From Oikopleura dioica (Eukaryota > Animalia > Chordata), in assembly GCA_907165135.1 (NCBI GenBank), contig CAJRAX010000009.1:1-64000 (forward strand): a DNA stretch of 64,000 nt, in the 5' to 3' direction. The notes under the pieces were generated by a model. The model saw only the letters and a program-made list of their open reading frames with translations. It ran no database searches and had not been told where the DNA came from. The position numbers and the translations under genes are program-made. Shown piece after piece: positions 470 to 54,071 of this stretch. The stretch's first letter is position 1; every line of letters begins with the position of its first letter.

Positions 470-563
470 TTACTGGCTGAGCTTCCCGAAAGGGCTAAAC
501 GCTAAGTTACCGCGGGCAGAATATCCCAAACCGGTAAAAAGCGTTATAAGCGCTCCCAGGTAA
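470..563 (+). ncRNA. Putative structured cis-RNA (three-way junction) in family-1 LTR; second copy at 8154-8247
   Basis: CTGG-ct-GAGC/GCTC-CCAG, CCC-GAAA-GGG, AACGCT/AGCGTT, junction ATAAGC; pairing preserved by compensatory changes in the other families. Function unknown. Confidence 0.65.
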
Positions 564-1221
564 TCGAACTCGCCGAGGACTCGGTTACTGCATTTTCTAG
601 AAAACTGACCACTTTCAACGCCGCAGTTACACGCCGACCCGACTAGGACGACAACGACAACTTCGACTACTACCACAACGACAACGAAACCCCTGCCTGG
701 ACTGACAACGGACTACTGACAACAACAACGACTACTGCCCTGGAACTTTGTCGGAATCTGTAGTTAAACAGTGGGTCACATAGTGAGAAAGCTGTTTGAT
801 TACAAATTTCGTCAAAAAGCGCCACTTATGGCGAATTTATTAAAAATAAGAATTCTCAAAAGAAATCGTAACATGTTATATAATTATCTAAGAATTGACG
901 TTACGTAAAAAGATGATGAAAGTTTGCAAATAACGCGTTACGTAAGAAGCCACAATGGCCGAAATGGCCCGATTTACGAAAACAATAGAAAAATCCGGAA
1001 CCAACCGGTTTCTGAAAAGAAACTTTTCAAAATTTCAAATTTCAAAAATCATTCTCGATTATCAATAAAACCACCAACAGCTATTTTTATTTTCGTTTCT
1101 TTTGCAAGGATTCTAGTTTATTGAATTTGGTATCAGTGATGACCACAGAGGACGAATCCCAAGAAGCGAAGCCGATCATAATGGCAAAAGTAAGTCAGCT
1201 CCATTTCCCGAGGAAATTTTA

Positions 1222-2397
1222 ATGGCCAGCCTTTCCCCTTTATCTGGGTCGCAATTAATTTCACCGACTATTCAATTATATCAGTTTCAATTGTATATAA
1301 GCATTCTCGAAGATAGGTTGTGTCAGTTTAGTGCTCTTTTTGAACGAAGTCTGAAGGACTTTTCTCGAACGGAGGACTCGGATTTAAAAGCTCAGTTTCA
1401 GCGAAAACTTATTAATTGCATTCGTAGCTCTTGCTCTGAAGATTTTCTCGCGCAATACGGTCGGGATTTGGCTAATGAGACGTGCTATAAAAAGGCACTT
1501 GAATTTTTAAAAGAAATTTTTGGCGAGGAAACTGAAACAGACAAGAAAATGCGGGCAACGAACGAGTTCGAAAATTTGGTCCGAAGGACTGATTTAAATG
1601 AAAAATTTGTTTCCTTTTTGAGACGAATCAAATCACTTGCCCAATTGATCGATCATCGAAAGGACGCGGTTGATTTTCTTGTGGAAAATAAATTTAAGAA
1701 ATTTCTAGAGCCCGCCAATTTGAGCTTTTTGCGGGACCATAAGATGCAAAATTCGAGTGCGGATGAAATAGCGAAATTTTTAGATGAAAGGGAGAGACAC
1801 TGTCTTGCCCAAGTTTCTGCGGTCAATACTGATCGTATGAATTCATTTATTGATCAAACCTCCGAAATGTTGTCGAGGCAACTTGAGGCATTTAACGAGA
1901 GTAATAAAAAGAGTCAGGAGGCTCACGAGAAAAAGAATGAGGAATTGTCGAAAGCTCTGAAAGATTTGACAGCGACTGTTAATGAGCTGAAATTAGAAAA
2001 GCAGCAGAAGCCTGAAAGTAACTCTTTTACGAACAAAAACTTTTCGCGAGAGCAAAATTTTCGACAAAATGATTTTTCACCATCACAAAATCCTCAAAAT
2101 TTTCGTCCGCCGAATTTTTTTACTCCGCCTGGATTTCCTCAGCATTTTCAGAATTTAGGATCACCTAGAAATTTTCAAATCCCACAGAATCGCCCCGTTT
2201 TGTTTTGCTCAGAGTGCGGTAAATTTGGACACATGAAGCGAAATTGCCGATTTATTGAATGTCACGGTTGTGGTCAAAAAGGACACATTCAGCGTTTCTG
2301 TCCAAGATATCATAATCAACCTGGCCAAAATAATAATCGTGAGAATAGAAATTTTCCTCCCTTTTCGCGTGGTTCGGGAAACGGGTATTCGGGTTGA
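1222..2397 (+). CDS. gag: Gag polyprotein of element 1
   Basis: Two CX2CX4HX4C knuckles (CSECGKFGHMKRNC, CHGCGQKGHIQRFC). The homologous copy at 57426 indicates the true start is ATG 1139, out of frame here because of a 1-nt difference near 1186. Confidence 0.9.
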   Translation: MASLSPLSGSQLISPTIQLYQFQLYISILEDRLCQFSALFERSLKDFSRTEDSDLKAQFQRKLINCIRSSCSEDFLAQYGRDLANETCYKKALEFLKEIFGEETETDKKMRATNEFENLVRRTDLNEKFVSFLRRIKSLAQLIDHRKDAVDFLVENKFKKFLEPANLSFLRDHKMQNSSADEIAKFLDERERHCLAQVSAVNTDRMNSFIDQTSEMLSRQLEAFNESNKKSQEAHEKKNEELSKALKDLTATVNELKLEKQQKPESNSFTNKNFSREQNFRQNDFSPSQNPQNFRPPNFFTPPGFPQHFQNLGSPRNFQIPQNRPVLFCSECGKFGHMKRNCRFIECHGCGQKGHIQRFCPRYHNQPGQNNNRENRNFPPFSRGSGNGYSG

Positions 2398-7682: not shown

Positions 7683-8819
7683 TGATACCTACTGTGAAAA
7701 AAAAAAATATTATTACTGAAGCGCTAAATCACGGCCAAAGATAAAAGCATGATCTCACAAATTAACAATAAATAACTGGTCAGGTTTGATCGGACCTCGT
7801 CAAAAATCAAAAAAAATTTAGCCAAACCGGAAAAAATGAAAAAAAAAATAGGTTTGCTGATTAGACTGAGGGTAATTTCTAGCATGAGAACGCTAGGAAA
7901 TTCTGATTACTATATTTTCCGCACGTACGCGTGTATTCACATGTTCTGAGGCACATTAGCCACCCTTTTGATATCTTTGATTCAAAAGGTTTTTCTTAAT
8001 AACTTCTTTTAGGTTCAAAGTTAAAACGCATGAATTTATCTCACAATAATTTCTTTAATTTATATTTCTGCTTTTTCAAAAATTCAATCTTTTCAAAATA
8101 TTTTACATTTACTGGACGATGATTCTTCTCAACGCCGTTGGAATAAATAATTCTTACTGGCTGAGCTTCCCGAAAGGGCTAAACGCTAAGTTACCGCGGG
8201 CAGAATATCCAAAACCGGTAAAAAGCGTTATAAGCGCTCCCAGGTAATCGAACTCGCCGAGGACTCGGTTACTGCATTTTCTAGAAAACTGACCACTTTC
8301 AACGCCGCAGTTACACGCCGACCCGACTAGGACGACAACGACAACTTCGACTACTACCACAACGACAACGAAACCCCTGCCTGGACTGACAACGGACTAC
8401 TGACAACAACAACGACTACTGCCCTGGAACTTTGTCGGAATCTGTAGTTAAACAGTGGGTCACATAGTGAGAAAGCTGTTTGATTACAAATTTCGTCAAA
8501 AAGCGCCACTTATGGCGAATTTATTAAAAATAAGAATTCTCAAAAGAAATCGTAACATGTTATATAATTATCTAAGAATTGACGTTACGTAAAAAGATGA
8601 TGAAAGTTTGCAAATAACGCGTTACGTAAGAAGCCACAATGGCCGAAATGGCCCGATTTACGAAAACAATAGAAAAATCCGGAACCAACCGGTTTCTGAA
8701 AAGAAACTTTTCAAAATTTCAAATTTCAAAAATCATTCTCGATTATCAATAAAACCACCAACAGCTATTTTTATTTTCGTTTCTTTTGCAAGGATTCTAG
8801 TTTATTGAATTTGGTATCA
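7683..8819 (+). repeat. 3' LTR of element 1
   Basis: Direct repeat of 6-1135, followed by TSD CATCG. Confidence 0.96.
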
Positions 8820-10679
8820 CATCGTTATCATGAATCGCCCAAAAACGAGGTCAAAATTTTGAAATTTCGTTTTTTTGCCCTTATTTTATTTGCAGCGTTT
8901 CTGACGTCTTCCGAGCGTCATTTTGGTTGATTCTGAGCCTCTCAAACCCAACAGAAAAAAAATTCAAAAAAAAAATTTTTTTTTCGATGGTCATCGTTAT
9001 CATAAATCGCCCAAAAACGAGGTCAAAATTTTGAAATTTCGTTATTTGGTCTAATTTTATTTGCAGCGTTTTTGCCGTATTCCGAGCGTCATTTTGGTTG
9101 ATTCTAAGCCTCTCAAACCCAACAGAAAAAAAATTCAAAAAAAATTTTTTTTTCGATGGTCATCGTTATCATGAATTGCCCAAAAATGAGGTCAAAATTT
9201 TGAAAATTCGTTTTTTTGCTCTAATTTTATTTGCAGCGTTTCTGTCGTCTTCCGAGCGTCATTTTGGTCGATTCTGAGCCTCTCAAACCCAACAGAAAAA
9301 AAATTCAAAAAAAAAATTTTTTTTTCGATGGTCATCGTTATCATAAATCGCCCAAAAACGAGGTCAAAATTTTGAAATTTCGTTATTTGGTCTAATTTTA
9401 TTTGCAGCGTTTCTGCCGTATTCCGAGCGTCATTTTGGTTGATTCTGAGCCTCTCAAACCCAACAGAAAAAAAATTCAAAAAAAATTTTTTTTTCGATGG
9501 TCATCGTTATCATGAATTGCCCAAAAATGAGGTCAAAATTTTGAAAATTCGTTTTTTGCTCTAATTTTATTTGCAGCGTTTCTGTCGTCTTCCGAGCGTC
9601 ATTTTGGTCGATTCTGAGCCTCTCAAACCCAACAGAAAAAAAAATTCAAAAAAAAAATTTTTTTTTCGATGGTCATCGTTATCATAAATCGCCCAAAAAC
9701 GAGGTCAAAATTTTGAAATTTCGTTATTTGGTCTAATTTTATTTGCAGCGTTTTTGCCGTATTCCGAGCGTCATTTTGGTTGATTCTAAGCCTCTCAAAC
9801 CCAACAGAAAAAAAATTCAAAAAAAATTTTTTTTTCGATGGTCATCGTTATCATGAATTGCCCAAAAATGAGGTCAAAATTTTGAAAATTCGTTTTTTGC
9901 TCTAATTTTATTTGCAGCGTTTCTGTCGTCTTACGAGCGTCATTTTGGTCGATTCTGAGCCTCTCAAACCCAACAGAAAAAAAATTCAAAAAAAAAATTT
10001 TTTTTTCGATGGTCATCGCTATCATGAATCGCCCAAAAACGAGGTCAAAATTTTGAAAGTTCGTTTTTTGCCCTTATTTTATTTGCAGCGTTTCTGTCGT
10101 CTTCCGAGCGTCATTTTGGTCGATTCTGAGCCTCTCAAACCCAACAGAAAAAAAAATTCAAAAAATTTTTTTCGATGGTCATCGTTATCATAAATCGCCC
10201 AAAAACGAGGTCAAAATTTTGAAATTTCGTTATTTGGTCTAATTTTATTTGCAGCGTTTTTGCCGTATTCCGAGCGTCATTTTGGTTGATTCTAAGCCTC
10301 TCAAACCCAACAGAAAAAAAATTCAAAAAAAATTTTTTTTTCGATGGTCATCGTTATCATGAATTGCCCAAAAATGAGGTCAAAATTTTGAAAATTCGTT
10401 TTTTGCTCTAATTTTATTTGCAGCGTTTCTGTCGTCTTCCGAGCGTCATTTTGGTCGATTCTGAGCCTCTCAAACCCAACAGAAAAAAAATTCAAAAAAT
10501 TTTTTTCGATGGTCATCGTTATCATGAATCGCCCAAAAACGAGGTCAAAATTTTGAAAGTTCGTTTTTTGCCCTTATTGTATTTGCAGCGTTTCTGCCGT
10601 CTTCCGAGCGTCATTTTGGTTGATTCTGAGCCTCTCAAACCCAACAGAAAAAATTCAAAAAATTTTTTTCGATGGTCAT
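8820..10679 (+). repeat. Satellite A array, ~11 monomers of ~165-172 bp
   Basis: Unit GATGGTCATCGTTATCATGAATCGCCCAAAAACGAGG...GAGCCTCTCAAACCCAACAGAAAAAAAATTCAAAAAAAATTTTTTTC recurs at 8820, 8992, 9161, 9333 etc. Confidence 0.98.
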
Positions 10680-11707
10680 TGATACGAATAAAGGAAAGAA
10701 CACAAGAAAAAATGAAAAATTGAATATCCCAGTCACATAAATATTTTCGCCAATTAGGTTGATTAGGCATGAATTTCACAGTTTTATGTTCCGACGATTT
10801 TCGGAGCCAAATCTCGGATGCTTGCATGAATTCATAAATCTCTATTTTTCCCTCATAACGTACGCGTTATTTCACAAATCAAAGGCACATTAGCCACCCG
10901 TTTCGGCGGTTCTTTATTTAACTCTTTCTAGTGCTCACTACTTCTTTTATTTAATTTTTGAACTGGTAATTATTATTGATGAATCAAGCTGACTCTTCTA
11001 TGTCTTCAAAACGATGATGGCAATTCTTCTTGACGATAAAAAATCGATCGGCATTTTCTACTACTACAACAGAGCTGTTGCATGGATTTCATCCTCTAGC
11101 TGAGTTCCGCTTTAAGCGGCTTGACAGTGTGACCCCGTGCTCCTCGGGATGGCGCTGTCTGTAAGTACTCCTAGGTAGGCAAAATTGATTGAACACTTTT
11201 CTGGCTCGCTTAAGGAAAGCTGACCACTCTCCTCAAAACCGACAGAATTGCAGCTTCAACAATGGCGGCGACTTCTCTGGCAACAACGACGACTACGCAA
11301 TGGACTGACAACGATTATTGGAACTGGCTTTGGAAAAGTATTAGTAAAAATTCATTAAATTCTATCAAAAAGGGATATGGCCACATAGTGGGAAGTTGAA
11401 CTTTTTGATAAAATTTATTTCTTGGGATTAATTTCGAAGCGAACGTGGCTGTTTCGGCGAATTTCGATTGACAGAAAAACAATTGCGCGAAAAGCGCTCA
11501 CCATATTTGGAAAGAAAAACATGGCGCGAAATGCGCCGCGCCTTATTTGGAAAGAAACGCACCTGCGCGAAATGCGAATTGAAAATTTGAAAATTTGAAA
11601 AATCACTCTCTCCATACTCAAAATAATACAGCCACGTTTTGAAATTTTGGCGTCATTCTTTGCAAGAATTCTAGCTAAGAGAGCATTTGAGCTGCAAATC
11701 GGTATCA
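10680..11707 (+). repeat. 5' LTR of element 2
   Basis: TGATACG...GGTATCA; by eye differs from the 3' LTR by two substitutions and a 2-nt poly-A length change. Confidence 0.97.
11090..11175 (+). ncRNA. Putative structured cis-RNA (three-way junction) in family-2 LTR; copies at 17816-17901, 30240-30325, 36733-36817, 38052-38137, 46578-46662
   Basis: CTAG-ct-GAGT/ACTC-CTAG, CCGC/GCGG, GACAG/CTGTC, junction GTAAGT; GC-rich island inside an AT-rich LTR. Confidence 0.65.
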
Positions 11708-19741: not shown

Positions 19742-21034
19742 TGATACGGAAGCGGCTGTCCTGCAGGAATTTTGCTCGATCTCTAACTCTAGAATGCCAA
19801 GCGAAAATAACGAGAATCAAATTTAAAATTTGCGTGGTTTTATTTGTGATTTGAATGCCGGAAAAAGGCGCGACGCGGGGTTAAATAGCAGCGAGATTCA
19901 ATCAGTGTTTTTGAACAAGCGGTTGTTTTTGAAAAACAATTTTTCTTTTGAAAACAAGGAAAAGAGCCCGTGGCTTTCTTTAGCGGTTTTCTTGCGGGAA
20001 ATCCTTTCGGATCGATTTCTTTTCGGATGATGAGCTGGTCGAACTTGCCAAGCAAGTTATTTTCAAAGGATTTTGAAGCCGGCGCCGCGCGTGACGAGAT
20101 AAAACGCAAATTAATTTTTTTTGATAATAAAAAGCAGAAAATAATAACAGCCACTAAAACTTCTCACTATGTGACCGTAGAAGTGACTGTTAATTAGGAT
20201 TGAAAAATATAAAAGGATGAGAAAAGAAAAAGAATATGTACAAAATTTTAACAAATAAATTGAATAAAATTTGGTCAGGATTTTATAAAATAAATTTATC
20301 AAAATTGAAATCATAGAAGAAGCAAATTCCAAGGAACATACCCGGGGGAAGTTACTGTCGCGGTTCGCACCGTATCTTCTCTTACGGATGAGCTAGTTTG
20401 CGACAAGCGGACGCACTGACAGAGAGTTTGTCCGACCCCACGGCACCGAGATGATACGACGGTTTATCGGCTCGTTGGAGTAGTTGTTGTTGAAGAAGGT
20501 GTTGACGGCTATCTTGTTGTAGAAGTTGAATCGTATGAACTGTCAATAATCGAACTTTTAAAATCGCAAAGCAATGATAAGAAATATCAATAAATAGATT
20601 AAACATGCGGTTTTGCGAATTGCATATTTTTGATGAATGGACGTCAGATCGCACTAGAATAGTCAGAAACAAATTAAGATTTTTTCCAAAGTATGCGTAC
20701 ATACACATTAATCCTAGACTGAATAAACCCTTAATTAATTTCCGACCCGTTGACTATGATGAGAGCATATGAGCATTCCAATGATAAAAGTAGAAATCGT
20801 AAAGAGATGACATGATGATAACACAATTTTGGGTCAATCTGGCTCGTAAAAACTGACCATCTTTTCATTTTGAGAAGAATATCGTGAAATGATTTTTGGA
20901 AAAATGTCTGATCAATTTGGTGATACCAAGCTGACAAGACAAATTTAAACTAACGTAGAACCGAATTGACGTAAATATTTGGCCGTGAAATAAATTTTTT
21001 GTGTTGCTTGAGGCGTTGTTCCCGAAGGATATCA
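19742..21034 (-). mobile_element. Solo LTR (family 4), 1293 bp
   Basis: TGATA...TATCA ends; TSD CTTCT at 19737-19741 and 21035-21039; carries the shared GGTCACATAGTGAGAA motif (20164-20174) and the three-way-junction motif (20342-20443) on the minus strand; no coding remnant. Confidence 0.88.
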
Positions 21035-23381: not shown

Positions 23382-23641
23382 TGATACCGAAAGGGATGAT
23401 TCTCTAAGCTAATCTGCAACTTGCAAAGGAAACAATTAAAAATTCAGGAATCGACGCTATTTTATTTGGTAAGATCGAGAATGATTTTCGAATTTCAAAT
23501 TTTCAAATTTCAATTCCGCGCAGATGGTAAAATTTCCAAATAAGGGCATTTCGCCAAGTATTTCGCGGATGTTTTGATTTTGCGCGGCGCATTTCGCGCT
23601 CTTGTTTTTCTCGTTGTTTTCTTCATTTTCGCCGCAGTGAT

Positions 23642-24826
23642 TGATACGATTCCTGCTTATTTTCTCAAAACGATTCTTGCTATAAAATACTAAAAATTTA
23701 TTTGCTGTTGGTGATTTATTGAAAGATCAAGAATGAGGATCAATTTTTGAAAATGGAGAAGGTCAAGTTTTGCCAACCGGTTTGCGCTGGATTTCCATTG
23801 TTAAGAAGTCATGGCGCCATTTACGTCAATTGTCTTTCGCATTATGTAACTTTCTGATGAAATTTTTCATTTTCAATTTATCCAAAGGCAAAATAGCCAT
23901 TATATAATTTTCATAATCTTCGTTATGTAACCCCAATGATTGTGGTTACATAATTTTCGTCTTTTCAAATTTCATTTTTTTGTATTTTTCTTTGCCACAG
24001 CTGGCGCATTTTCTTGAAATCACTCTCAAAACCGGCTTTCTCACTATGTGACCCACCGATTGTGAAAGTATTTCTGGGTTTCCAAAGCCGTTAAGCAAAT
24101 CGTAGTCGTTCCAAGCGTTTTTATCGTTGTCCAAAGTGTTGTAGAAGTAGAAGTCGTCGTTGTCTCTGCCATCGGCTCGTTGTGTAGTTGCCATCTTTGT
24201 TTTTTGGTCAGAAAATTTAAAAAAGCAGCCGTAACGGGCTCGACAGTTTTGATTACCATGTCGCGCTTATGTTCGCGGTTGGCCATATTGAGATATTCTG
24301 CTCCAGGCTACTTTGCGAACAGCCACTTTCGTGGAAGCGAAGCATGTAAGGATGATAGGTCCCAACGTCGTCGAAATCAAGGAAGAAAAGCAGCAGTCGT
24401 TCCCCAGCGGTTCGTTGATTTTTATGACAGAAACAAATATTTTTCAGATAAAATTTTCCTAAGAATTTCTTATACTTTTATTTACAATCAACACTGTAAA
24501 TAAAGGCATAGATATATGTGATTTTTAACGTTTTAACGATCATCCTTTTCATGCAATAATAAATTGATGTGATACACGCGTACGTGCAGAATATGCGAAC
24601 TAAAATCCTAACCAGTAATTATTTTGTAAAAGCCCTTGAACCCTTAATTTTCCTTTGATTAAATTAGCAAAAAACTTTACCCACTTAGTTAAGGGCCCAA
24701 GGGAAAATCAATATGGCTCTTATTGATTTTTCTTTGATTAACATGCACTATGGGCTTTTATATTTGAGCAACATTTTTATTCATTTTTTTGTATTTTGAT
24801 TTTTGTTATTTATTCGGAAGGTATCA
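23642..24826 (-). repeat. 3' LTR of element 3
   Basis: TGATAC...GTATCA; matches 27768-28896 except for homopolymer indels; three-way-junction motif at 24253-24349 (copy at 28322-28418). Confidence 0.93.
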
Positions 24827-24893
24827 CCATGGCCACGCCAGGGTCTTAAATGAGCATCTTTTGCCTTCGAATATTTGAAGCCCTAGAACGAGC

Positions 24894-27767: not shown

Positions 27768-28896
27768 TTTATTTGCTGTTGGTGATTTATTGAAAGATCA
27801 AGAATGAGGATCAATTTTTGAAAATGGAGAAGGTCAAGTTTTTGCCAACCGGTTTGCGCTGGATTTCCATTGTTAAGAAGTCATGGCGCCATTTACGTCA
27901 ATTGTCTTTCGCATTATGTAACTTTCTGATGAAATTTTTCATTTTCAATTTATCCAAAGGCAAAATAGCCATTATATAATTTTCATAATCTTCGTTATGT
28001 AACCCCAATGATTGTGGTTACATAATTTTCGTCTTTTCAAATTTCATTTTTTTGTATTTTCTTTGCCACAGCTGGCGCATTTTCTTGAAATCACTCTCAA
28101 AACCGGCTTTCTCACTATGTGACCCACCGATTGTGAAAGTATTTCTGGGTTTCCAAAGCCGTTAAGCAAATCGTAGTCGTTCCAAGCGTTTTTATCGTTG
28201 TCCAAAGTGTTGTAGAAGTAGAAGTCGTCGTTGTCTCTGCCATCGGCTCGTTGTGTAGTTGCCATCTTTGTTTTTGGTCAGAAAATTTAAAAAGCAGCCG
28301 TAACGGGCTCGACAGTTTTGATTACCATGTCGCGCTTATGTTCGCGGTTGGCCATATTGAGATATTCTGCTCCAGGCTACTTTGCGAACAGCCACTTTCG
28401 TGGAAGCGAAGCATGTAAGGATGATAGGTCCCAACGTCGTCGAAATCAAGGAAGAAAAGCAGCAGTCGTTCCCCAGCGGTTCGTTGATTTTTATGACAGA
28501 AACAAATATTTTCAGATAAAATTTTCCTAAGAATTTCTTATACTTTTATTTACAATCAACACTGTAAATAAAGGCATAGATATATGTGATTTTTAACGTT
28601 TTAACGATCATCCTTTTCATGCAATAATAAATTGATGTGATACACGCGTACGTGCAGAATATGCGAACTAAAATCCTAACCAGTAATTATTTTGTAAAAG
28701 CCCTTGAACCCTTAATTTTCCTTTGATTAAATTAGCAAAAACTTTACCCACTTAGTTAAGGGCCCAAGGGAAAATCAATATGGCTCTTATTGATTTTTTC
28801 TTTGATTAACATGCACTATGGGCTTTTATATTTGAGCAACATTTTTTATTCATTTTTTGTATTTTTTGATTTTTGTTATTTATTCGGAAGGTATCA
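27768..28896 (-). repeat. Truncated 5' LTR of element 3
   Basis: Identity to the 3' LTR begins at TTTATTTGCTGTTGG. Confidence 0.9.
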
Positions 28897-30020: not shown

Positions 30021-30558
30021 TGATAAGAATAGCGAAAAAGAACATAAAAGATAAAAATTGAATCCTTCCACTCACGGCGCCACCCGTTTCGGCGGTTCTT
30101 TATTTAACTCTTTCTAGTGTTCAATTTATTCTTTCTGACTGGTAATTATTTTTGATGAAACAAATTCAAAACGTCTGAATTTGATTCCAAGAAAAAAATC
30201 AATTGGCTTTTTCTAATTACGGAGCTGTTGCATGAATTTCATCCTCTAGCTGAGTTCCGCTTTAAGCGGCTTGACAGTGTGACCCCGTGCTCCTCGGGAT
30301 GGCGCTGTCTGTAAGTGCTCCTAGGTAGGCAAAATTGATTGAACACCTTTCTGGCTCGCTTTAGGCGCGAAAGCGCTGCGCCTTATTCGAAATGCCTTAT
30401 TTGGAAACATCTGCCATCTGCGCGAATTTGAAATTTGAAAATTTGAAAACTGAAAAATCACTTCCTTTCTTACCAAATACAATACGCGCCGATTTCCGAA
30501 TTTTTAGTGTTTCCTTTGCAGATCGCAATTAGCTTAGAGATTTGATTAAAACGGTATC

Positions 30559-36286: not shown

Positions 36287-37310
36287 TGATAACGAGAATA
36301 CATGGAAAGATAACAAAAAATAAAAAATAAAAATTGAATTCTTATAGTTTCACGGCCACTTTCGCCAATTAGGTTGATTTTCATGAAAATCACAAAATAA
36401 ACTGTTCTGAAGAACCTGGAGCCAAATCTGTGGATGCTTGCATGAGTTCATCATAATCTATTTTTCCTTCATAACGTACGCGTTATTTCACATCATCAAA
36501 GGCACATTAGCCACCCGTTTCGGCGTTAACTTTCACGATTTAACCAATTCTAGTGCATCAAATTTTCAATTATTTCTCAGCAAAAACATTCATTTTAGTG
36601 CTCTTATTATTCTAGTTCTAATACAAGCTGACTTTATTATTCTGCAAACGACGACGATTCTCTGGACAACCTGGAATTGCCTCAAACGATGGACTCTTCT
36701 ATGATTTCAGACGGAGCTGTTGCATGAACTTTCATCCTCTAGCTGAGTTCCGCTTTTGCGGCTTGACAGTGTGACCCCGTGCTCCGCGGGATGGCGCTGT
36801 CTGTAAGTGCTCCTAGGTAGGCGTAATTGATTGAACCCTTTTTGGCTCGCTTTAGGATGACTGACCACCCTCTGGAAAACCGACAAAAATGCAGCTTCAA
36901 CAATGGCGGCAACTTCTTCAACAACGACAACGACAACGCAATGGACTGACAACGATTTGGAAACGGCTTTGCTATAGTACTCTTATCAAAAGTGATATGG
37001 CCACATAGTGGGAAGTTGACCTTTGATAAGAAAATGGAAATTATGGAAATCGGCTGCGGGTTGCGTGGCTGCACGCGTGAGATTGAATGACGAAAAACAA
37101 AGCGCGAAAAACAATTTGGAAAGAAAACATAAGCGCGAAATGCCTTATTTGGAAACATCTAGCACCTGCGCGAATTTGAAATTTGAAAATTTGAAAATTT
37201 GAAAAATCACTCTCTTCTTACCCAAAATAATACAGCCACGATTTCCGAATTTTTAGTGTCATCCTTTGCAGATCGCAATTAGCTTAGAGATTTGCATTAA
37301 AACGGTATCA
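36287..37310 (+). repeat. 3' LTR of element 5
   Basis: TGATAA...GGTATCA; carries all shared LTR motifs. Confidence 0.9.
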
Positions 37311-37617: not shown

Positions 37618-38666
37618 TGATACATTTTCATAGAGGAAAGAACACAAGAAAAAATGAAAAATTGAATATCCCAGTTTTCAGATGATGTTGAATCATTTTC
37701 ATCAAAAAAGGTTGATTAGGCATGAATTTCACAGATATAATTTCCGATGATTTTGGATTTACATCAAATCTCGGATGCTTGCATGAATTCATAAATCTCT
37801 ATTTTAGATGATGTTGTACGCGTCATTTTCACAATCCAAAGGCACATTAGCCACAGAATATTTTTCGGCGGTTCTTTATTTAACTCTTTCTAGTGCTCAC
37901 TACTTCTTTTGTTTAATTTATTCACTGGTAACTATTTTTGATGAATCAAGCTGACTCTTCTATGTCGAAAAACGATGATGGCAATTCTTTTTGACGATAA
38001 AAATCAATTGGCTCATTTTCTAAAACTACGACGGAGCTGTTGCATGAATTTCATCCTCTAGCTGAGTTCCGCTTTAAGCGGCTTGACAGTGTGACCCCGT
38101 GCTCCTCGGGATGGCGCTGTCTGTAAGTGCTCCTAGGTAGGCAATATTGATTGAACACCTTTCTGGCTCGCTTTAGGAAAGCTGACCACTCTCCTCAAAC
38201 CGACAGAATTGCAGCTTCAACAATGGCGGCGACTTCTCTGACAACAACGACGACTACGCAATGGACTGACAACGATTATTGGAACTGGCTTTGGAAAAGT
38301 ATAAGTAAAAATTCATTAAATTCTATCAAAAAGGGATATGGCCACATAGTGGGAAGTTGAACTTTTTGATAAAATTTATTTCTTGTGATTAATTTCGAAG
38401 CGAACGTGGCTGTTTCGGCGAATTTCGATTGATAGAAAAACAATTGCGCGAAAAGCGCTCACCATATTTGGAAAGAAAAACATGGCGCGAAATGCGCCGC
38501 GCCTTATTTGGAAAGAAACGCACCTGCGCGAAATGCGAATTGAAAATTTGAAAATTTGAAAAATCACTCTCTCCATACTCAAAATAATACAGCCACGTTT
38601 TGAAATTTAGGCGTCATTCTTTGCAAGATTCTAGCTTAGAGAGCATTTGCGCAGCAAAACGGTATC

Positions 38667-46352: not shown

Positions 46353-47190
46353 TGATACGAATACGGGAAAGAACCAAGAGAAAAAAAAATAAAAATTGAA
46401 TTTACTTCTCACAAATAATTTTGCGCCAATTAGGTTGATTAAGCATGAAATTCACGGTTAAATTGTTCTGATGATTTTGGAGCCAAATCTCGGATATTGC
46501 ATGAGTTCATAAAATCTCTATTTTTCCTTCAATTGGTATTCTTCTTCAACTACAACGAAGCTGTTGCATGATAAATTCATCCTCTAGCTGAGTTCCGCTT
46601 TAAGCGGCTTGACAGTGTGACCCCGTGCTCCTCGGGATGGCGCTGTCTGTAAGTGCTCCTGGTAGGCAAAATTGATTGAACACCTTTTTGGCTCGCTTTA
46701 GGATTAACTGACCATTCTCCTTAAAACCGACAAAACTGCAGCTTCAACAATGGCGGCGACTTCTTCTTCAACGACAACGACAACGCAATGGACTGACAAC
46801 GAACATGGAACTGGCTTTGGTAAAAATATGAACGAATAGAATTTTTATTGATAAGGGATATGGCAACATAGTTGGAAATTGAACTTATTGATTAAATTCG
46901 ATTCTTGCGATAAAATTCGAAGCGAACGTGGCTGTTGGAGCGAAATTGAAATCAACGAAGGAAACAAATGCGCGAAAGCGCTGCGCCTTATTTGGAAAGA
47001 AAAACATCGGCGCGAAATGCGCTGCGCCTTATTTGGAAGTAATAGCACCTGCGCGAAATGCGAAATTGAAATTTTGAAAATTTAAAAATCACTCTCTTCA
47101 AACCCAAAATAATACAGCCACGTTTCGAATTTTAGCCTCATTCTTCGCAGGATTCTAGCTTAGAGATTAATTTGCAGCTAATTGGCATCA
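46353..47190 (+). mobile_element. 5' LTR of element 7 (family-2-related); internal region visible only as traces
   Basis: TGATACG start preceded by ATGAT; shared LTR motifs; ends GGCATCA followed by a gag-like CAACTTCAAGG..AAAATGCCCGAAGAAT; gag/pol junction trace at 48235-48300. Confidence 0.82.
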
Positions 47191-47199
47191 TGACATCAA

Positions 47200-50100
47200 T
47201 CATCAACTTCAAGGCCGTAAAATGCCCGAAGAATATTTTTTGATGAAAATGAACTCAATTCTCATCAATATTTTCGGCCAAAAACGATGTCAGACGAATT
47301 TTTCGATGAAAATGAATTCAAGCGATAAAAAAACGCAATGAAAAAAACGCATCATAATATTTTTAGATGAAAATAATCGACATCATCTAAAAATTTGGAA
47401 AAAGCATTTGACATATTTTTTCGTTTGCGTTCGCAATAATTAAAAACGCCCAAAAACGCATCATAATTACGGGCGATTAAAATGAACTCAACAGCATCTG
47501 ATTTCGCCAAATGCATCAGAATTGAGTTCCTTGATGAAAATTTGGAACAGTCTTGAAACGGAAAAACGAGAGCAGGGCTTTTTTCGATGAAAATGAACTC
47601 AACATCATCTAAAAACGAAATGAATGAGCATCATTCTCTTTTTTTTGACAAGAACTCAACATCATCTAAAAACTTATCTCAGCATCCTGATGCAGTGATG
47701 AAAATGTCTCAACATCATCTAAAAACGCCGAAAAACCATCAAATATTTTTTCGATGAAAATGAACTCAACATCATCTAAAAACGCCAAAAGACGCATCAG
47801 AACGTTTTTTCAATCGAAAATGAACTCAAAATGTTCATCTTCTAACGCCAAAAAACGCATCTCGAATATTTTGTCGATCGAAATGAACTCAACTTTTGGA
47901 TCTGAAAAACTGCCAAAAACGCATCAGAACTATTTTTAAGATGAAAATGAACTCAACATCATCTAAAAACGCGAAAAACGCATCAGAATATGGCTCGATG
48001 AAAATGAACTCAGCAGATCAAAAAACGCCAAAAAACGCATCAGCATATTTTTTTCGAAAAATTTCTCAACATCATCCAGCAAACGCCAAAAGCGGCTCAG
48101 AATATTTTTTGCCGAAATTGAACTCAACATCATCTAAAAACGCCAAAAACGCATCAGAATATTTTTGCGATGAAAATGAACTCAACATCAATAAAAACGC
48201 CAAAACGCATCAGAATATTTTTGCGATGAAAATAGAACGGGAAAATAACACCACTGATCAGCATGGACTAGATTTTAGACGAATTCTGGTCAAATTTATC
48301 GTGTTAAAAACTTTAAAAACGCATCAGAATAATTTTCGATGAAAATGAACTCAACATCATCTAAAATTCAAAAACGCATCAGAATTTTTTCGAGAAAATG
48401 AACTCAACATCATTAAAAACGCCACTTAAAAACGCATCAGAATATTTTACCGATGAAAATGAACTCAACATCATCAAAAACGCCAAAAACGCATCAGAAT
48501 ATTTTTCGATGAAAATGAACTCAACATCATCTATTCTCGCCAAAAACGCATCAGAATATTTTTCGATGAAAATGAACTCAACATCATCTAAAAACGCCAA
48601 AAAACGCATCAGAATATTTTTTCGATGAAAATGAACTCAACATTATGAAAAACGCCAAAAACGCATCAGAATATTTTTTCGATGAAAATGAACTCAACAT
48701 GATCGTAAAACGCCAAAAACGCAAATCAATATTTTTTCGATGAAAATGAACTCAACATCATTGAAAAACGCCAAAAAACGCATCAGAATATTTTTCGATT
48801 AAAATGAACTCAACATCATCTAAAAACGCCAAAAACGCATCAGAATATTTTTTCGATGAAAATGAACTCAACATCATCTGAAAATTCAAAAACGCATCAG
48901 AATATTTTTTCGATGAAAATGAACTCAACATCATCTTAAAAACGCCAAAAACGCATCAGAATATTTTTCGATAAAAATGAACTCAACATCATTTAAAAAC
49001 GCCAAAAACGCATCAGAATACCCGCGGGTCGATGAAAATGAACTCAACATCATCTAAAAACGCCAAAAACGCATCAGAATATTTTTCGATGAAAATGAAC
49101 TCAACATCATTAAAATGAACAAAAACGCATCAGAATATTTGGCGATGAAAATGCAACATCAAAATTCATTAAAAACGCCAAAAACGCATCAGAATATTTT
49201 TTCGATGAAAATGAACTCATGCCATCATCTAAAAACGGTAAAATTTTATCAGAATCGTTTTTCGATGATTCATGAACTCAACATCATCTAAAAATATCAA
49301 AAAACGCTCAGAATCTTTTCATCGAATGAAAATGAACTCGAAAATCATCTAAAAACGAAAAACGATCAGAACATTTTTCGATGAAAATGAACTCAACGTC
49401 ATTTTAAAAACGCCAAAAAGCATCAGAATATTTTTTCGATGAAAATGAACTCAACATCATTTAAAAACGATAAAAAACGCATCAGAATATTTTCCCGATG
49501 AAAATGAACTCAACATCATCTAGAAACGCCGAAAAACGCATCAGAATCGACCTTTTTCGAATAGAAAATGAACTCAACATCATCTTACAACGCCAAAAAC
49601 GCATCAGAATGATTTTTCGATGAAAATGAACTCATTGTTTTCATCTAAAATGCGCCAAAAACGCATCGAATCTTTTTCGATGAAAATGAACTCACCATCA
49701 TCTAAATACGCCAAAAACGCATCAAGAATCTTTTTCGACCGTAACATGAACTCAACATCATCGAAAAACGAGAAAAACGCGATCAGAAGGCATTTTTCGA
49801 ATGAAAATGAACTTTTCATCATCTTAAAACGGCAAAAACGCATCAGAATATTTTTCGATGAAAATGTTTCAAATCATCAAAAATTGCATTTTCGCATCGG
49901 TATATTTAATTCGAAAAATGAATTTCAACATCATCTTGAAAAACGCCAAAAATGCATCAGAATATTTTTTCGATTGAAAATGAACTCAACATCATCTAAA
50001 ACTCCAAAAACGCATAGGCGTTTTTTCAAAAATGAACCTTTTCATCATCTAAAAACGCCAAAAAGCTTTCAGAATATTTTTATTATGAAAATGAACAACA

Positions 50101-51550
50101 TCATCAAAACGCCAAAAACATCAGAATATTTTTTGATGAAAATGAACTCAACATCATAAAACCGCCAAAATCAACGCGCGTTTTTTCGATGAAAATGATT
50201 TCGAATCAATTCGCAAATTAAAACGCATCAGAAAATTTTTCGCAAAAAATGATGTCTCTTCCATCATCTACCGAGTGCACAAGTTCGCGTCAGATATACG
50301 TTATTTCGATTTTTGAACTCAACATCATCAAAAAACATCACTTTTGCAAAAGAATTATTTTTCGATCAGTGCCCATACTCAACAAAATTTAAAACGCCAA
50401 AAATTTCATCCAATATTTTTCGATGAAAATGAACTCAACACGAGAATATTCCTCACGCCAAAAACGCATCAGAACCCTTTTTCAAATGAAAATGAACTCG
50501 ACATCACAGAAAAACGCCATTAAGGCAATCAGAAATTTTTCGAAGAAAATGGTTCAACTGGATCTAAACCGCCAAAAAACGCATCAGAATAAGTCGATGA
50601 AAATGAATTCAACATCATTTTTTTCGCCAAAAACGCATCAAAGAATATTTTTTCGATGAAAATAACTCAACATCAATAAAAACGCCAAAATCGCATGGCG
50701 AAATTTTTTGTTTTCTTAAAATGGTTTCAACATCATATAAAAAGCCAAAATCGCATTAGAATATTTATTCGATGAAAATGACCTGTGTTCATGTGAAAAA
50801 CGCAAAAATGCATTAAATATTATCCTCGATTACAAATGAATCAAATAGATCAAAACTTTTCAAAAAGCCCTAGAAATATATTTCTGAATGAAAATGAATC
50901 AAAGAATTCAAAAAACGTCCAAAAAAAAAGATGCTAATATTTCATCGATGTTTTGGGCTCATTCATCATTTAAAAACGCCAAATTTTGCGACCATTTCAA
51001 ATTTTTTTTTCGACTAAAGCAACTCAACTCGCTAGGAATACGCCAAAAAAGCATCAGAATATTTTTCGATGAAAATGAACTCAACATAGCCTTTTGACGT
51101 CAAAAAACTCAATAATATTTTTTCGATGAAAATGAACTCAACATCAATTTTTAAAAACTCCAAAAACGCATCAGAATTTTTGTTCTTGAAAATGAACTCA
51201 ACCACATTCGAGATCAAAAACGCATCAGAATATCGCTTCGATGAAAATGAACTCCATCAGAAAAACGCTTCAAAATGCATTCGTTCATTTTATCGATACT
51301 AAAGATTTTTGTCAACATCATTTGTAAGAAGACTCGCATCACGCTCAATTTTCATGATGAAAATAACTGAACATCATCTAAAAATTAATTAGCAGCTCAT
51401 GTTTTTCGATGAAAATGAAGCCAAGATCATGGATAAAAATTGCCAACAACGTATCAGAATATTTCCCCAGCAAAATGAACTCAAAATCTTGATCGATGAA
51501 AAACGCCAAAAATATTCAGAACCTTTTCTCGATGAAAATGAATTCAACGG
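47200..51550 (-). repeat. Satellite B in inverted orientation, noisy, interleaved with element 7 traces
   Basis: Reverse-complement unit GATGAAAATGAACTCAACATCATCTAAAAACGCCAAAAACGCATCAGAATATTTTTTC. Confidence 0.85.
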
Positions 51551-51559
51551 AGACTCAAA

Positions 51560-54071
51560 AATTTCAAAAACGCATCAGAATATTTGGATCGTACAAATCA
51601 TAGAACCGGTGTCAAGAAGAAAATTAACAGGATTTGAAAAAATATTGGCCTGAACAAAAAACTGACCGCCACTTTTCGATAGAGAATTTTTGAAAATTTT
51701 TAAAGTAGGAAACTCTTTCTGACCATAAAGAGTTTCACTTCTTAGTTTTTTTGCTCCTCGTTCTTTTCCTTGCAATCCCATTGCCAGTGACCTTTTTTGC
51801 CACATACGTGACACACTATTTCTGGGCAAAAACGACGAGAATGGTCGTTTGTCTTGCACGAGCGGCATCTGAATTCTTGCCCTGAATTCGGACGTCGCTC
51901 GGAAGGCCTCGGATTTTTGGCCTTCTCAGCGGCCCCACCAAATTTCAGCGCAGAGATCTGAGCTGTCAATGCACTCATTTTTTCAGTCAAAGCAATTGTA
52001 TTTCGGTCGTTTTCTTGCCGAATTGACTCTAGAGAACGTTCAAAGTTTTCACTCTGCTTCGCGAGAGCCGAGCTCTGAGACTCCATGAAATCTCTCAAGC
52101 TCGATTCTAGCTCGATTTTTGAAACGCTGACTGATGCCGGTGGAGCAATGTGTCTATCTCGTGAGTCAAGAAATTCACATATCTCATCCGGCTTCGAGTT
52201 CCACTTCATATTATCCTTCAAAAACGACACGTTTCGTGGCGCAAGACTGTTCTTAAAATGACTAGAGAAAATATATTCCTGAGCACCGCTATCATCCGAA
52301 ATTAATTTTGCGCACGACTTGATGCGACCAAGAAAAGCTTCAAATTTTTCATCGATTTCGACGCGTCGAGCAAGAGAAGAAAGCTTCTCTCTAGCACGCT
52401 GAGCAACTTGCTCTTTGGTTTCTTTCGCAAAAAGATTAGCGATAAAATCGAGCCTTTTTTCCCAACCCTCGATAGAAGATAATTCCTCTGCATATTCAAC
52501 GTAAAATGACTCGGCAAGTGAGTCGATGACAAAAGAAGCGGCCTGACGCTCAAACTGTTTCAAAAGCGCACTTTTATTATCTCTAGAGTGCTCCTCTAAA
52601 GACCGATTGAAAAGCCAAGCCGCCCGCTGAATTTTATCATTAACTCGCTCGTGCCAATTTTTGTATTGAAAATATTTCACGCCAACGGCGAGAGAATGAT
52701 GCGAAGGGGTTGAAAAAAGCGTACCTAAGTGAAGAATTTCTTCCGGTGTTTTGGACCGCGTAGTTGTGGGTTCTGTCTCTGAGGGCGCCATGATACCTTT
52801 TCTGAGTCTCTTTTACTGCTGATTGCAATTAACTATCAATTTTTAATCAAATTTTCTGCAAGAAAATACAAGAAAATATATTTTGCGGCGTTCAGAGGGA
52901 GATTTATTGTGAGACTGATTCAAAATAAAATTTGGCGGTGAGCGAAAATTTTAGCAGGTGCGCGAAAATGCATAACAAAGGCGAAAACAAAGACATAAAC
53001 AAATGAAATTTCCTTTTTTGGAAATAAGGCGCTTCAAGTTCATCCGGTGTATTTTTTGAATCCATTTCGGATTTTGTATCTTCTTGCGGTTCGAGCCGGG
53101 TTCCCGAGCCGGAAGGGTTGAGTTTTCCAAAGTGAAGCGTTTTCTGAGTTTTTTCCGCCCAAAGAAGCCATTTTTTGTAAAAGAAGTAATTAGAATAAAG
53201 AATGTGAACATTTTAAAATAAAATAATTTATAATCAAAATTGGTCAGTTATTTTAATCATAAATTAAGCGCAAAAGGTGATAACATAAATTAACAAGCAT
53301 AAATAAAATTACAGTAAGAATTAAATCACATAAAAATTACAGGTTAATAAAATCATATTAAAATTACAGTTAAAATAAAAATAACTTCGGCTCACCTTTC
53401 GGCAGTTACTGACGCAGTTCCCTTTGCCTTGGTAATTCGCGTCAAGCCTTATCGTTAATAAGGAACCGAAAAGGTCTCCCGTATCTGCTCAATCGCCCAA
53501 GGAGTGCTTTGTGAAGTTGATGAGTATGAAAGGAATGAAGAAGGAAAGATGACGGGAAGGTAGGACCCGTTTTCGTCGTCCGCGTCGATAGAGCATAGTC
53601 GTTGTTGATTTCAAATTAAACAGAACAGAGTGAGTTCAAATCTATAGAATTAATGAAACAGGAGCAATGATGTTGAATTTTTAACAATTATGCCAAAGTT
53701 TGAGGCAACATGCGAATTTGAGTTCATTTTCGAAAAAATAATTTGCAAGCGGTTAGGGTTTTACATTGCTACATTTAGGAAGCTTTGCGATTTTTTGAAA
53801 AATGATTCTGAAATCAATAAATGAACAGTAAGTATGAAAGCACGCTTTATGATTTTCCCTATTTTCAAAGATTTTAAAGGATGCTAAAGAAGATTTGATG
53901 AGAGCATTGTTCAGCGGAATAATCGACGCGTTTTTGAGTGAATTGACAAATGTTGATTTCGATTAAAATGAATTTTATTCGTGAATCAGTTTTACGACGG
54001 GTTGGAAGATTGATCTTCCATTCATTTTCATCGATAAAAATAGTTGAAGATGCTGTTTTTTAGCGGTATTA
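51560..54071 (-). mobile_element. 5' part of Ty3/Gypsy element 8 (family 5): LTR, gag, protease
   Basis: LTR inner end TGATACC at 52791; possible outer end GGTATTA at 54065-54071 (uncertain); FLLDTGS near 51600; three-way-junction motif at 53395-53474. Confidence 0.85.
51742..52791 (-). CDS. gag: Gag polyprotein of element 8
   Basis: 349-aa open frame; knuckles CRSCKTNDHSRRFC and CHVCGKKGHWQWDC; A_AAA_AAC before the stop and a GAAACTCTTT/AAAGAGTTTC stem after it. Confidence 0.92.
   Translation of the reverse strand: MAPSETEPTTTRSKTPEEILHLGTLFSTPSHHSLAVGVKYFQYKNWHERVNDKIQRAAWLFNRSLEEHSRDNKSALLKQFERQAASFVIDSLAESFYVEYAEELSSIEGWEKRLDFIANLFAKETKEQVAQRAREKLSSLARRVEIDEKFEAFLGRIKSCAKLISDDSGAQEYIFSSHFKNSLAPRNVSFLKDNMKWNSKPDEICEFLDSRDRHIAPPASVSVSKIELESSLRDFMESQSSALAKQSENFERSLESIRQENDRNTIALTEKMSALTAQISALKFGGAAEKAKNPRPSERRPNSGQEFRCRSCKTNDHSRRFCPEIVCHVCGKKGHWQWDCKEKNEEQKN

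What the first reader, a model, noticed from the sequence alone, without database searches (positions are those of the whole stretch)
470..53474. Covarying three-way-junction RNA fold conserved in the LTRs of all five retrotransposon families
Fourteen LTR copies carry a GC-rich 80-100 nt island whose sequence differs between families but whose pairing is kept: P1a-(C)U bulge-P1b-U(U)-P2-CU-P3-RUAASY-P1b'-P1a'. Examples: family 1 (470-563) CTGG ct GAGC/GCTC CCAG, CCC GAAA GGG, AACGCT/AGCGTT; element 9 (55380-55473) CTGT t GAGC/GCTC ACAG with a GTAA loop, so the GNRA tetraloop is kept; family 3 (24253-24349, minus) CATG ct TCGC/GCGA CATG, CCAC GAAA GTGG, GTTCGC/GCGAAC; family 2 (11090-11175) CTAG ct GAGT/ACTC CTAG, CCGC/GCGG, GACAG/CTGTC; split solo LTR (29156-29238) CCAG/CTGG; family 4 (20342-20443) CCG t GGGG/CCCC CGG, CGGAC/GTCCG, TGTCGC/GCGACA; family 5 (53395-53474) CCTTT t CGG/CCG AAAGG, CCTTAT/ATAAGG, GACGC/GCGTC. 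P3 closes a further hairpin, with GGG/CCC vs GAG/CTC around an invariant CAGAATAT loop in families 1 and 3. By eye it fits none of the hammerhead, HDV, twister, pistol or TPP consensuses I recall. Self-cleaving ribozymes in terminal repeats are known for retrozymes and Penelope-like elements. Inference: a new self-cleaving, end-protecting, packaging or translation element of autonomous Ty3/Gypsy elements.
Basis: partly seen in the sequence, partly recalled or inferred. Interest (0 to 1): 0.88.

Follow-up and report, generated by a model that had tools for sequence, protein, structure and literature searches.

The report
Folded RNA module in Tor LTRs
The long terminal repeats of one group of jumping genes (Tor elements) in the tunicate Oikopleura dioica carry a real, previously undescribed three-armed RNA fold that always ends exactly at a splice-donor-like GU; it is probably a control signal of the element's own RNA, and nothing supports a self-cutting ribozyme.

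Summary
A covariance model built from three families alone found the other families. Single-sequence folding gives the same topology in 12 of 14 variants. Pairing is 85-93% against 28-44% for slid controls, and 16-23 of 25 pairs show changes on both sides.

The genome is Oikopleura dioica (its size and scaffold count match the Okinawa assembly). The elements are env-less Tor (Ty3/gypsy) retrotransposons. At least 136 copies exist in the genome. The fold is also present, always on the sense strand, in 23 marine-metagenome relatives (pol at least 42% identical), and absent from about 33 more distant Ty3/gypsy loci.

No Rfam family matches it, ribozymes, riboswitches, 5S and tRNA included.

New here: every copy is followed directly by GU(A/G). 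In at least 10 lineages a T-rich YAG follows 39-43 nt later, then a CUGAC(C/U)A box, which looks like a host-sized mini-intron. Upstream-AUG patterns and an initiator-plus-AAUAAA block place the fold in U3, so probably in the 3' UTR.

Function is inferred: splice-donor-linked RNA processing or recognition. No usable RNA reads were found.

An earlier report of this scan (s1-409156) reached the same view on other DNA of this genome.

The parts
470..563 (+). Three-way-junction fold, family 1 (group A), 5' LTR of element 1
   Evidence: R1 111.7 bits; MFE fold gives the three-way junction
8154..8247 (+). Same fold, 3' LTR of element 1
   Evidence: R1 107.8 bits
55380..55473 (+). Fold in element 9 (group A variant; P1a CUGU/ACAG, GUAA loop)
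24253..24349 (-). Fold, family 3 (group B), 3' LTR of an internally deleted element
28322..28418 (-). Fold, family 3, truncated 5' LTR
11093..11178 (+). Fold, family 2 (group F), 5' LTR of intact element 2
   Evidence: Found by R1, which was not trained on it (E 0.01); R2 38.3 bits
17819..17904 (+). Fold, family 2, 3' LTR of element 2
30243..30328 (+). Fold, family 2-like LTR copy with a downstream deletion
36736..36820 (+). Fold, family 2-like LTR copy
38055..38140 (+). Fold, family 2-like 5' LTR of the element at about 37630
46581..46665 (+). Fold, family 2-like LTR copy (weaker P1)
   Evidence: R2 27.3 bits
29153..29236 (-). Fold in the split solo LTR (P1a CCAG/CUGG)
20338..20446 (-). Fold, family 4 (group D), solo LTR inside the satellite array
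53392..53477 (-). Fold, family 5 (group E)
   Evidence: R1 E 8e-4 without training on it
60421..60453 (+). Fragment: inner P3 hairpin only, in a decayed element-9-like LTR
560..600 (+). Mini-intron-like segment directly after the fold (GUAAUC ... UUUUCUAG, 41 nt), followed by the CUGACCA box at 605-611
11175..11214 (+). Mini-intron-like segment of family 2 (GUAGGC ... CUUAAG, 40 nt), followed by the CUGACCA box at 11220-11226
6..1135 (+). 5' LTR of element 1 (TGATAC...GTATCA; TSD CATCG). The 3' LTR is at 7683-8819
10680..11707 (+). 5' LTR of element 2. The 3' LTR is at about 17406-18433. The gag AUG overlaps the LTR end and the primer-binding site
1053..1069 (+). Initiator-like UCAUUCU followed by AAUAAA, about 70-80 nt before the LTR end: the probable transcription start and poly(A) signal (inferred)

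Best explanation
It is a cis-acting folded module of the sense-strand RNA of an env-less clade of Tor (Ty3/gypsy) retrotransposons of Oikopleura.

Shown:
- The three-way junction has P1 with a C/U bulge, a P2 hairpin and a P3 hairpin with an internal loop.
- Its pairing is kept by compensatory changes across lineages whose pol proteins are only 42-60% identical.
- The invariant unpaired letters are CU (between P2 and P3), UAA (between P3 and P1) and a GU that follows the last P1 pair in every copy.

Inferred:
- The fold lies in U3, 530-670 nt before the LTR end and about 450-550 nt upstream of the probable start site. It would then be present only in the 3' untranslated part of the full-length RNA.
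- The 3' strand of P1 is the last few bases of an exon-like segment.
- The GU(A/G) is a U1-type splice-donor site that the fold partly hides.
- The following 37-45 nt segment, with a T-rich end and YAG, is a host-sized mini-intron or a decoy of one.

Proposed role: the fold gates use of that donor, and so decides how the element's RNA is processed (spliced or unspliced, export, polyadenylation). It may also mark the unspliced RNA that goes on to be copied.

That the fold is a real, selected RNA structure: about 0.95. That it lies in U3: about 0.65. The splice-donor-gating mechanism: about 0.35. The confidence given for this entry is that of the mechanism.
For: Structure:
- A model from three families finds the others.
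- Covariation counts are far above both controls.
- The same topology comes out of single-sequence folding.

Strand:
- In the core helices there are 35 G-U against 6 A-C pairs.
- All 25 metagenome hits are on the pol strand.

Distribution:
- At least 136 copies in the genome, often as same-strand pairs 6.8-8 kb apart.
- Present in all six first metagenome relatives and in 23 Tor-like loci, and in none of about 33 distant Ty3/gypsy loci.

Donor-like site:
- All 61 distinct 3' flanks start with GU, and the third base is A or G in all of them.
- AG precedes the GU in 46 of 61.
- A YAG lies at 39-43 nt and the box starts at 42-47 nt in at least 10 lineages, although the sequence between differs.
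- Host introns peak at 47 bp (PMC4122922).
- Family D has a 151-nt version with GUAUGU, CUGAC, a pyrimidine tract and a zone almost free of AG.

U3 placement:
- UCAYUCU followed by AAUAAA lies 60-115 nt before the LTR end in five families.
- The last 130-240 nt before the gag AUG are free of AUG, while the region after the fold is rich in AUG.
- Palindromic sites lie between the fold and that block.
Against: - There is no RNA evidence. The only reads that could be laid (four RNA runs under the species label) did not cover the family 2 LTR or gag at all, except for about 70 reads on the P3 hairpin whose flanks are not in this assembly. Transcription start, poly(A) site and splicing are therefore untested.
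- No genomic or metagenomic copy lacks the 40-nt segment precisely, which would be expected if spliced RNA were ever copied.
- Family E and one metagenome group lack the YAG and the box.
- A 3'-UTR intron would normally invite decay of the RNA.
- Family D has only one AUG in the 595 nt between the fold and gag (expected 8.7, P about 0.001). This hints that in that family the region is a 5' leader, which would put the fold in R.
- The alignments were fitted to the model, and the copies are related by descent, so the shuffle counts overstate independence.
Confidence: 0.35

Rival explanations
1. It is a packaging or dimerisation signal. The fold is the handle by which Gag (zinc-knuckle nucleocapsid) picks the full-length unspliced RNA, and the donor-like GU is part of the recognised surface, as in retroviral packaging signals that overlap the major splice donor.
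For: - The fold is restricted to one element clade and co-inherited with its gag-pol.
- It is on the sense strand.
- Every integrated copy keeps the segment after the GU. This fits a rule that only unspliced RNA is packaged.
- Gag has a CCHC knuckle.
Against: - Known packaging signals lie in the 5' leader, whereas this fold seems to be in U3.
- There are no palindromic loops that would serve for dimer kissing.
- No binding data exist.
Confidence: 0.2
2. It is an export, stability or localisation element of an intronless viral-like RNA, in the manner of a constitutive transport element or a nuclease-resistant structure. It would act without any link to splicing, and the GU and the spacer would be parts of a larger fold.
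For: - The probable 3'-UTR position.
- The compact junction has a long third strand and a conserved internal loop (AAGUAG opposite AAC) in P3, which suits protein binding.
- In families C and D the P2 loop is complementary to the downstream box.
Against: - No Rfam transport or nuclease-resistant family matches.
- The loop-to-box pairing is not general.
- The GU...YAG anatomy with host intron length would be left unexplained.
Confidence: 0.15
3. The fold lies in R. Transcription would start upstream of it, so it would sit near the 5' end of the RNA (and again near the 3' end). It would mask or present the major splice donor that silences the LTR poly(A) signal at the 5' end, as in HIV-1 and foamy viruses.
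For: - Family D has a 571-nt stretch free of AUG from the fold to gag (P about 0.001).
- The donor-like GU lies 450-550 nt upstream of AAUAAA.
- Pairing of UUAC with GUAA extends P1 over the GU in groups A-C.
Against: - In most lineages 6-18 AUGs lie between the fold and gag, and only the last 130-240 nt are free of them.
- An initiator-like block sits next to AAUAAA near the LTR end.
- R would have to be longer than 550 nt.
Confidence: 0.15
4. It is a new self-cleaving ribozyme.
For: - It is a compact three-way junction with a long third strand and a bulge in P1, the same general architecture as hammerheads.
- Ribozymes are known in the repeats of retrozymes and Penelope-like elements (general knowledge).
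Against: - No hammerhead, HDV, twister, twister-sister, pistol, hatchet or hairpin model matches, even at E up to 10.
- Junction strands of 2, 2-3 and 6-7 nt do not fit the hammerhead core on either strand.
- Only about seven unpaired letters are invariant.
- Cleavage in mid-LTR would separate the coding RNA from its poly(A) end, or remove R.
Confidence: 0.05
5. It is not an RNA structure at all, but a GC-rich DNA-level promoter block or a chance similarity among related LTRs.
For: - The LTRs share other conserved DNA blocks.
- Single-sequence folding z-scores are modest, -1.1 to -3.6.
Against: - 16-23 of 25 pairs change on both sides while pairing stays at 85-93%.
- Slid controls give 28-44%.
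- G-U outnumbers A-C by 35 to 6.
Confidence: 0.02

Closest known systems
Structure-masked major splice donor in retroviral LTRs and leaders (the HIV-1 packaging-signal three-way junction that sequesters the donor; the foamy-virus LTR structure that controls U1 access and poly(A) choice)
   Same: Both are folded RNAs of a retroelement in or next to the LTR with a splice-donor sequence at the foot of a helix. In HIV-1 the fold is also a three-way junction. In both, the fate of unspliced RNA is the likely stake.
   Different: This comparison rests on my own knowledge. There is no sequence or model similarity. The fold here probably lies in U3 (3' UTR) and not in R or the leader. The donor is followed by a 40-nt mini-intron-like segment. 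Function is untested.
Negative regulator of splicing of Rous sarcoma virus (a decoy 5' splice site that binds U1 and U11 and also promotes polyadenylation)
   Same: Both would be a donor-like site inside an unspliced retroelement RNA that need not be used for productive splicing.
   Different: The Rous element lies in gag and is not defined by a covarying three-way junction. This comparison rests on my own knowledge. Nothing here shows snRNP binding.
Constitutive transport element of simian type D retroviruses, and related 3'-UTR post-transcriptional elements
   Same: Both are conserved structured RNAs in the 3' untranslated part of an unspliced retroelement RNA.
   Different: The transport element is a long hairpin with two internal loops, not a three-way junction. 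There was no Rfam match.
Hammerhead ribozymes of retrozymes and Penelope-like elements
   Same: Both are three-way junctions carried in the terminal repeats of retroelements.
   Different: The defining core (CUGANGA, GAA, cleavage triplet) is absent on both strands. No Rfam hammerhead model matches.
LTR-borne small-RNA cassettes
   Same: Both are a compact folded RNA unit embedded in an LTR.
   Different: There is no 5S or tRNA match and no conserved A or B boxes. The carriers here are full autonomous elements, not miniature ones.

Membership tests
Tor (Ty3/gypsy Oikopleura retrotransposons) | gag plus pol with domain order RT, RNase H, integrase; LTRs with TG...CA ends; 4-5 bp target duplications; host is Oikopleura | tested here: met
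   - Pfam finds RVT_1, RT_RNaseH, Integrase_H2C2, rve and zf-CCHC.
- The LTRs read TGATAC...GTATCA, with target duplications CATCG and ATCAC.
- 56 matches (53 of them exact) to the O. dioica spliced leader against 0 in the control (the leader sequence was recalled from memory).
- The genome is 64.28 Mb in 19 pieces, as for assembly OKI2018_I69.
- The Tor sub-group (Tor1, Tor2 or Tor4a) was not determined.
Hammerhead ribozyme | Three helices around the conserved core CUGANGA / GAA / UH; matches an Rfam hammerhead model | tested here: not met
   The junction strands are UU, CU(N) and RUAASY(N), and the reverse strand does not fit either. There was no Rfam hit at gathering score or at E up to 10.
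Other self-cleaving ribozymes (HDV-like, twister, twister-sister, pistol, hatchet, hairpin) | A match to the family's covariance model | tested here: not met
   No match overlaps the motif in six variants at E up to 10, and none in the window at gathering score. Catalysis itself cannot be tested with these tools.
TPP and other three-way-junction riboswitches | A match to the aptamer model; many invariant ligand-pocket nucleotides | tested here: not met
   No Rfam match. Only about seven unpaired positions are invariant.
5S rRNA or tRNA-derived LTR cassette (Cassandra, Helenus) | A recognisable 5S or tRNA fold with internal Pol III boxes | tested here: not met
   ARAGORN finds no tRNA in the window. 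There is no 5S_rRNA or tRNA hit.
Spliceosomal mini-intron of O. dioica (for the segment after the fold) | GU at the 5' end and YAG at the 3' end, with a pyrimidine-rich tract | tested here: met
   GU in 61 of 61 distinct flanks. UUUAG, UCUAG or UUCAG lies at 39-43 nt in at least 10 lineages. Family E and one metagenome group are exceptions.
Spliceosomal mini-intron of O. dioica (for the segment after the fold) | Length within the host's intron size range (peak 47 bp) | tested here: met
   The segment is 37-45 nt (151 nt in family D). The host figure is from PMC4122922.
Spliceosomal mini-intron of O. dioica (for the segment after the fold) | Removal seen in RNA (a spliced junction in reads or cDNA) | tested here: inconclusive
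   The four RNA runs laid gave no coverage of the LTR and no joints. No genomic copy lacks the segment precisely.

The most novel reading that the evidence does not exclude
The fold is a new class of splice-gating or catalytic RNA. Either it is a structure that switches a retrotransposon's own mini-intron on and off to sort RNA between expression and replication, or it is a self-cleaving motif unrelated to all known ribozyme families. Either way it has been maintained for a long time in a chordate retroelement clade.
Probability: 0.1. Interest if true: 0.85.

Novelty: new variant of a known kind. Interest (0 to 1): 0.62.

Why it matters
Structured cis-acting RNAs are well known in retroviruses, but hardly any are defined by covariation in Ty3/gypsy elements of animals.

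This one offers several things:
- A clean, strongly covarying motif with more than 130 genomic copies.
- Independent relatives in ocean metagenomes.
- A fixed link to a splice-donor-like site in a host known for 40-50 nt introns and permissive splicing.

It gives a directly testable handle on how an intronless, env-less retroelement RNA is sorted between splicing, export, translation and reverse transcription in a compact chordate genome. It would also be a new entry for RNA family databases and a marker for annotating this Tor clade.

Tried and rejected
- **Rfam.** Searches at gathering score and at E up to 10 gave nothing on the motif.
- **tRNA scan.** Nothing found.
- **MAFFT across all families.** It misaligned P2 and P3. 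I therefore built a seed model from three families and let Infernal align the rest.
- **RNA reads.** The exception was about 70 reads on 11120-11164 whose flanks are not in this assembly. These probably come from another O. dioica lineage, so they say nothing about start site, end or splicing.
- **Nematode SL1.** Absent, which rejected my first guess of a nematode.
- **Exact-protein look-ups.** None of the window's gag and pol proteins is in the collection, so no transcript contigs could be reached that way.
- **More distant relatives** (pol 33-37% identical). One with full flanks lacks the motif. The others do not cover the LTR.
- **Lone hit at C2:5663067** (17.9 bits). It has no Tor context and is chance.
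- **Coding explanations.** A 169-codon ORF in the family D LTR is low-complexity and starts inside the fold. Motif lengths differ by non-multiples of three. An AUG after the fold is not conserved.
- **A 40-nt intron in family 1 gag.** I considered this, but it does not restore the frame.
- **Pairing of the P2 loop with the downstream box.** It holds in families C and D only, so it is not general.
- **Protein structure and complex tools.** Not relevant, not used.

Full report
**What the window is.** It is AT-rich eukaryotic DNA made of tandem satellites (units of about 58 and about 169 bp) and nested LTR retrotransposons. Element 1 has LTRs at 6-1135 and 7683-8819, with ends TGATAC...GTATCA and a CATCG target duplication. 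Element 2 has LTRs at 10680-11707 and about 17406-18433. Their ORFs carry zf-CCHC, RVT_1, RNase H, Integrase_H2C2 and rve, and there is no env.

The genome holds 56 matches (53 of them exact) to the Oikopleura dioica spliced leader, against none for the control (I recalled the leader sequence from memory). Its 64.28 Mb in 19 pieces, the longest 17.09 Mb, match the published Okinawa assembly OKI2018_I69. The elements are therefore Tor elements (PMC4402516). They belong to a clade without env.

**The observation.** All seven quoted examples fold by themselves into the same three-way junction. I built model R1 from families 1, 3 and element 9 only. With filters off it recovered families 5, 2, 4 and the solo LTR as full-length matches.

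Pair counts on the resulting alignments are far above both controls:

| Alignment | Cells paired | Slid controls | Pairs changed on both sides |
|---|---|---|---|
| A6 | 93.4% | 28-43% | 19 of 25 |
| A8 (47 distinct sequences) | 89.4% | 32-44% | 23 of 25 |
| A10 (metagenome, not used in training) | 85.2% | 29-39% | 16 of 25 |

In all three sets, 0 of 500 shuffles reached the observed covariation score. The copies are related and the alignments were fitted to the model, so these are not independent events. Even so, several pairs show three or four different Watson-Crick types, and single-sequence folding agrees in 12 of 14 variants.

In the core helices G-U outnumbers A-C by 35 to 6. All metagenome hits lie on the pol strand. 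The folded strand is therefore the element's sense RNA.

**Distribution.** A second model, R2, finds at least 136 copies in the genome. This is a lower bound, because only 150 candidates were scored. Many are same-strand pairs 6.8-8.0 kb apart, for example C4:91225 and 98400, or C1:8875121 and 8882027. They are concentrated at contig ends and in the small contigs. The single weak hit outside this setting has no Tor context and is chance.

Relatives of the pol protein come from seawater metagenomes. All six contigs fetched first carry the fold at the expected place: 590-820 nt before gag, or 610-1030 nt after the pol stop. A wider scan gave 25 hits in 23 Tor-like loci (pol at least 42% identical) and none in about 33 more distant Ty3/gypsy loci. 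A relative at 34% identity with full flanks lacks it.

**Anatomy.**
- P1 is 7-9 pairs, usually with a C/U bulge on the 5' strand.
- Then come UU, the P2 hairpin (GNRA-capped in some families, long in others), and an invariant CU.
- P3 follows, with an internal loop of type AAGUAG opposite AAC in most families.
- Then comes a 6-7 nt strand with an invariant UAA, and the return strand of P1.
- The fold sits 413-828 nt from the LTR start. Its distance to the LTR end is steadier, at 530-670 nt.

**What it is not.** Rfam gave nothing at gathering score. Nothing overlapped the motif at E up to 10 in six variants. That covers hammerhead, HDV-like, twister, twister-sister, pistol, hatchet, hairpin, TPP, 5S, tRNA and viral nuclease-resistant families. 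ARAGORN finds no tRNA. Paper searches found no description of it.

**The new feature.** Every one of 61 distinct 3' flanks begins GU right after the last P1 pair. The third base is A or G in all of them, and AG precedes the GU in 46 of the 61. In at least ten lineages a T-rich YAG lies 39-43 nt after the GU. After 4-6 more bases comes a box C(C)UGAC(C/U)A. The sequence in between differs freely.

This is the anatomy and size of the host's own introns, which peak at 47 bp (PMC4122922). Family D has a 151-nt version with GUAUGU, CUGAC, a pyrimidine tract and a single AG in 160 nt. Family E and one metagenome group lack the acceptor and the box. No copy lacks the segment precisely. In groups A-C a UUAC before P1 can pair with the GUAA, so the donor-like site is partly buried.

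**Where it sits in the RNA.** This part is inferred. Five families have an initiator-like UCAYUCU a few bases before a single AAUAAA (AAUAAU in family 2), 60-115 nt before the LTR end. In nearly all lineages the last 130-240 nt before the gag AUG contain no AUG, while the region just after the fold has up to 18. Palindromic, factor-site-like blocks lie in between.

This points to a short R and to the fold being in U3, and so only in the 3' untranslated part of the full-length RNA. Family D is an exception. It has one AUG in 595 nt (expected 8.7, P about 0.001), so a start upstream of the fold is not excluded. I put U3 at about 0.65.

**RNA evidence.** None usable. It gave no coverage except about 70 reads on the P3 hairpin (11120-11164). 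Their flanks are absent from this assembly. They probably come from another lineage of the species.

**Reading.** The best-supported account is a cis-acting fold of the Tor sense RNA whose P1 ends at, and partly hides, a splice-donor-type GU. It would gate a real or decoy mini-intron and so affect processing, or mark unspliced RNA. I give the mechanism about 0.35 and the reality of the structure about 0.95.

Rivals are:
- a Gag packaging handle;
- a splicing-independent export, stability or localisation element;
- an R-region donor mask of the HIV or foamy-virus kind;
- a new ribozyme, which is unlikely.

An earlier report of this scan on another piece of this genome (s1-409156) reached the same conclusion. 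I re-derived it independently here. I added the metagenome conservation, the strand test, the mini-intron statistics and the U3 argument.

The covariance models are profiles of the 95-position non-coding motif only.

Noticed in passing
window 8820-10679, 18434-19741, 21037-23381, 29686-30020; also L068, L069: The Tor elements sit inside arrays of a 162-172 bp satellite, with clean 5-bp target duplications. The same is seen on other contigs.
   Followed up: partly
window 23640-28896 (minus strand): The family 3 element (TSD ATCAC) has an internal deletion. It joins its 5' LTR, cut about 20 nt after the AAUAAA, directly to the RNase H part of pol. U5, the primer-binding site, gag, protease and RT are missing. 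The break lies at the likely poly(A) site, which suggests a template switch from an RNA end.
   Followed up: partly
window 11120-11164 (reads of run X4): About 70 poly(A)-selected RNA reads match only the P3 hairpin (93-97% identity). They continue into two kinds of flanks that do not occur in this assembly. One kind ends ...CUCAAAGG followed by UG, the other ends the same way followed by AU. They come from an expressed relative of the motif in another strain or lineage, and remain unexplained.
   Followed up: partly
LTRs: window about 270-285 and 10885-10897; L115, L093, L088, L089 upstream regions: Other LTR blocks are conserved across families and in metagenome relatives:
- GGCACATTAGCC followed by a hairpin, 150-230 nt before the fold.
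- A TCTCTTCCTTGAT block.
- A TCACATAGTGA palindrome.
- TTACGTAA sites downstream of the fold.
   Followed up: no
window 11707-11709; L067 3327-3329: In families 2 and D the gag AUG overlaps the last base of the LTR and the primer-binding site (..GTATC ATG GTG A..). The whole 5' UTR therefore lies inside the LTR.
   Followed up: partly
L067 2732-3326 (family D LTR, G000:C1:8875231-8875825): There is only one AUG in the 595 nt between the fold and gag (expected 8.7), and only one AG in the first 160 nt. Family D is also the family with many identical copies in chromosome arms, which suggests recent activity.
   Followed up: partly
L021-L023 and L067, L049, L057 (families C and D): The apical loop of the long P2 is complementary to the box after the mini-intron-like segment (GGUGGU with ACCACC; GUCAG with CUGAC or UUGAC). 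This is a possible pseudoknot in these two families only.
   Followed up: partly
window 37300-37640, 43900-46450, 47700-51600 (inverted), 54000-55000, 59400-64000: There are large arrays of a 58-59 bp satellite, on both strands, with strong GC and AT skew.
   Followed up: no
L081 6779-8716: A metagenome Tor relative (pol 35% identical) carries a third ORF of 645 codons after pol, which is env-like by position. Its LTR is not covered by the contig, so whether env-bearing clades have the fold is unknown.
   Followed up: no
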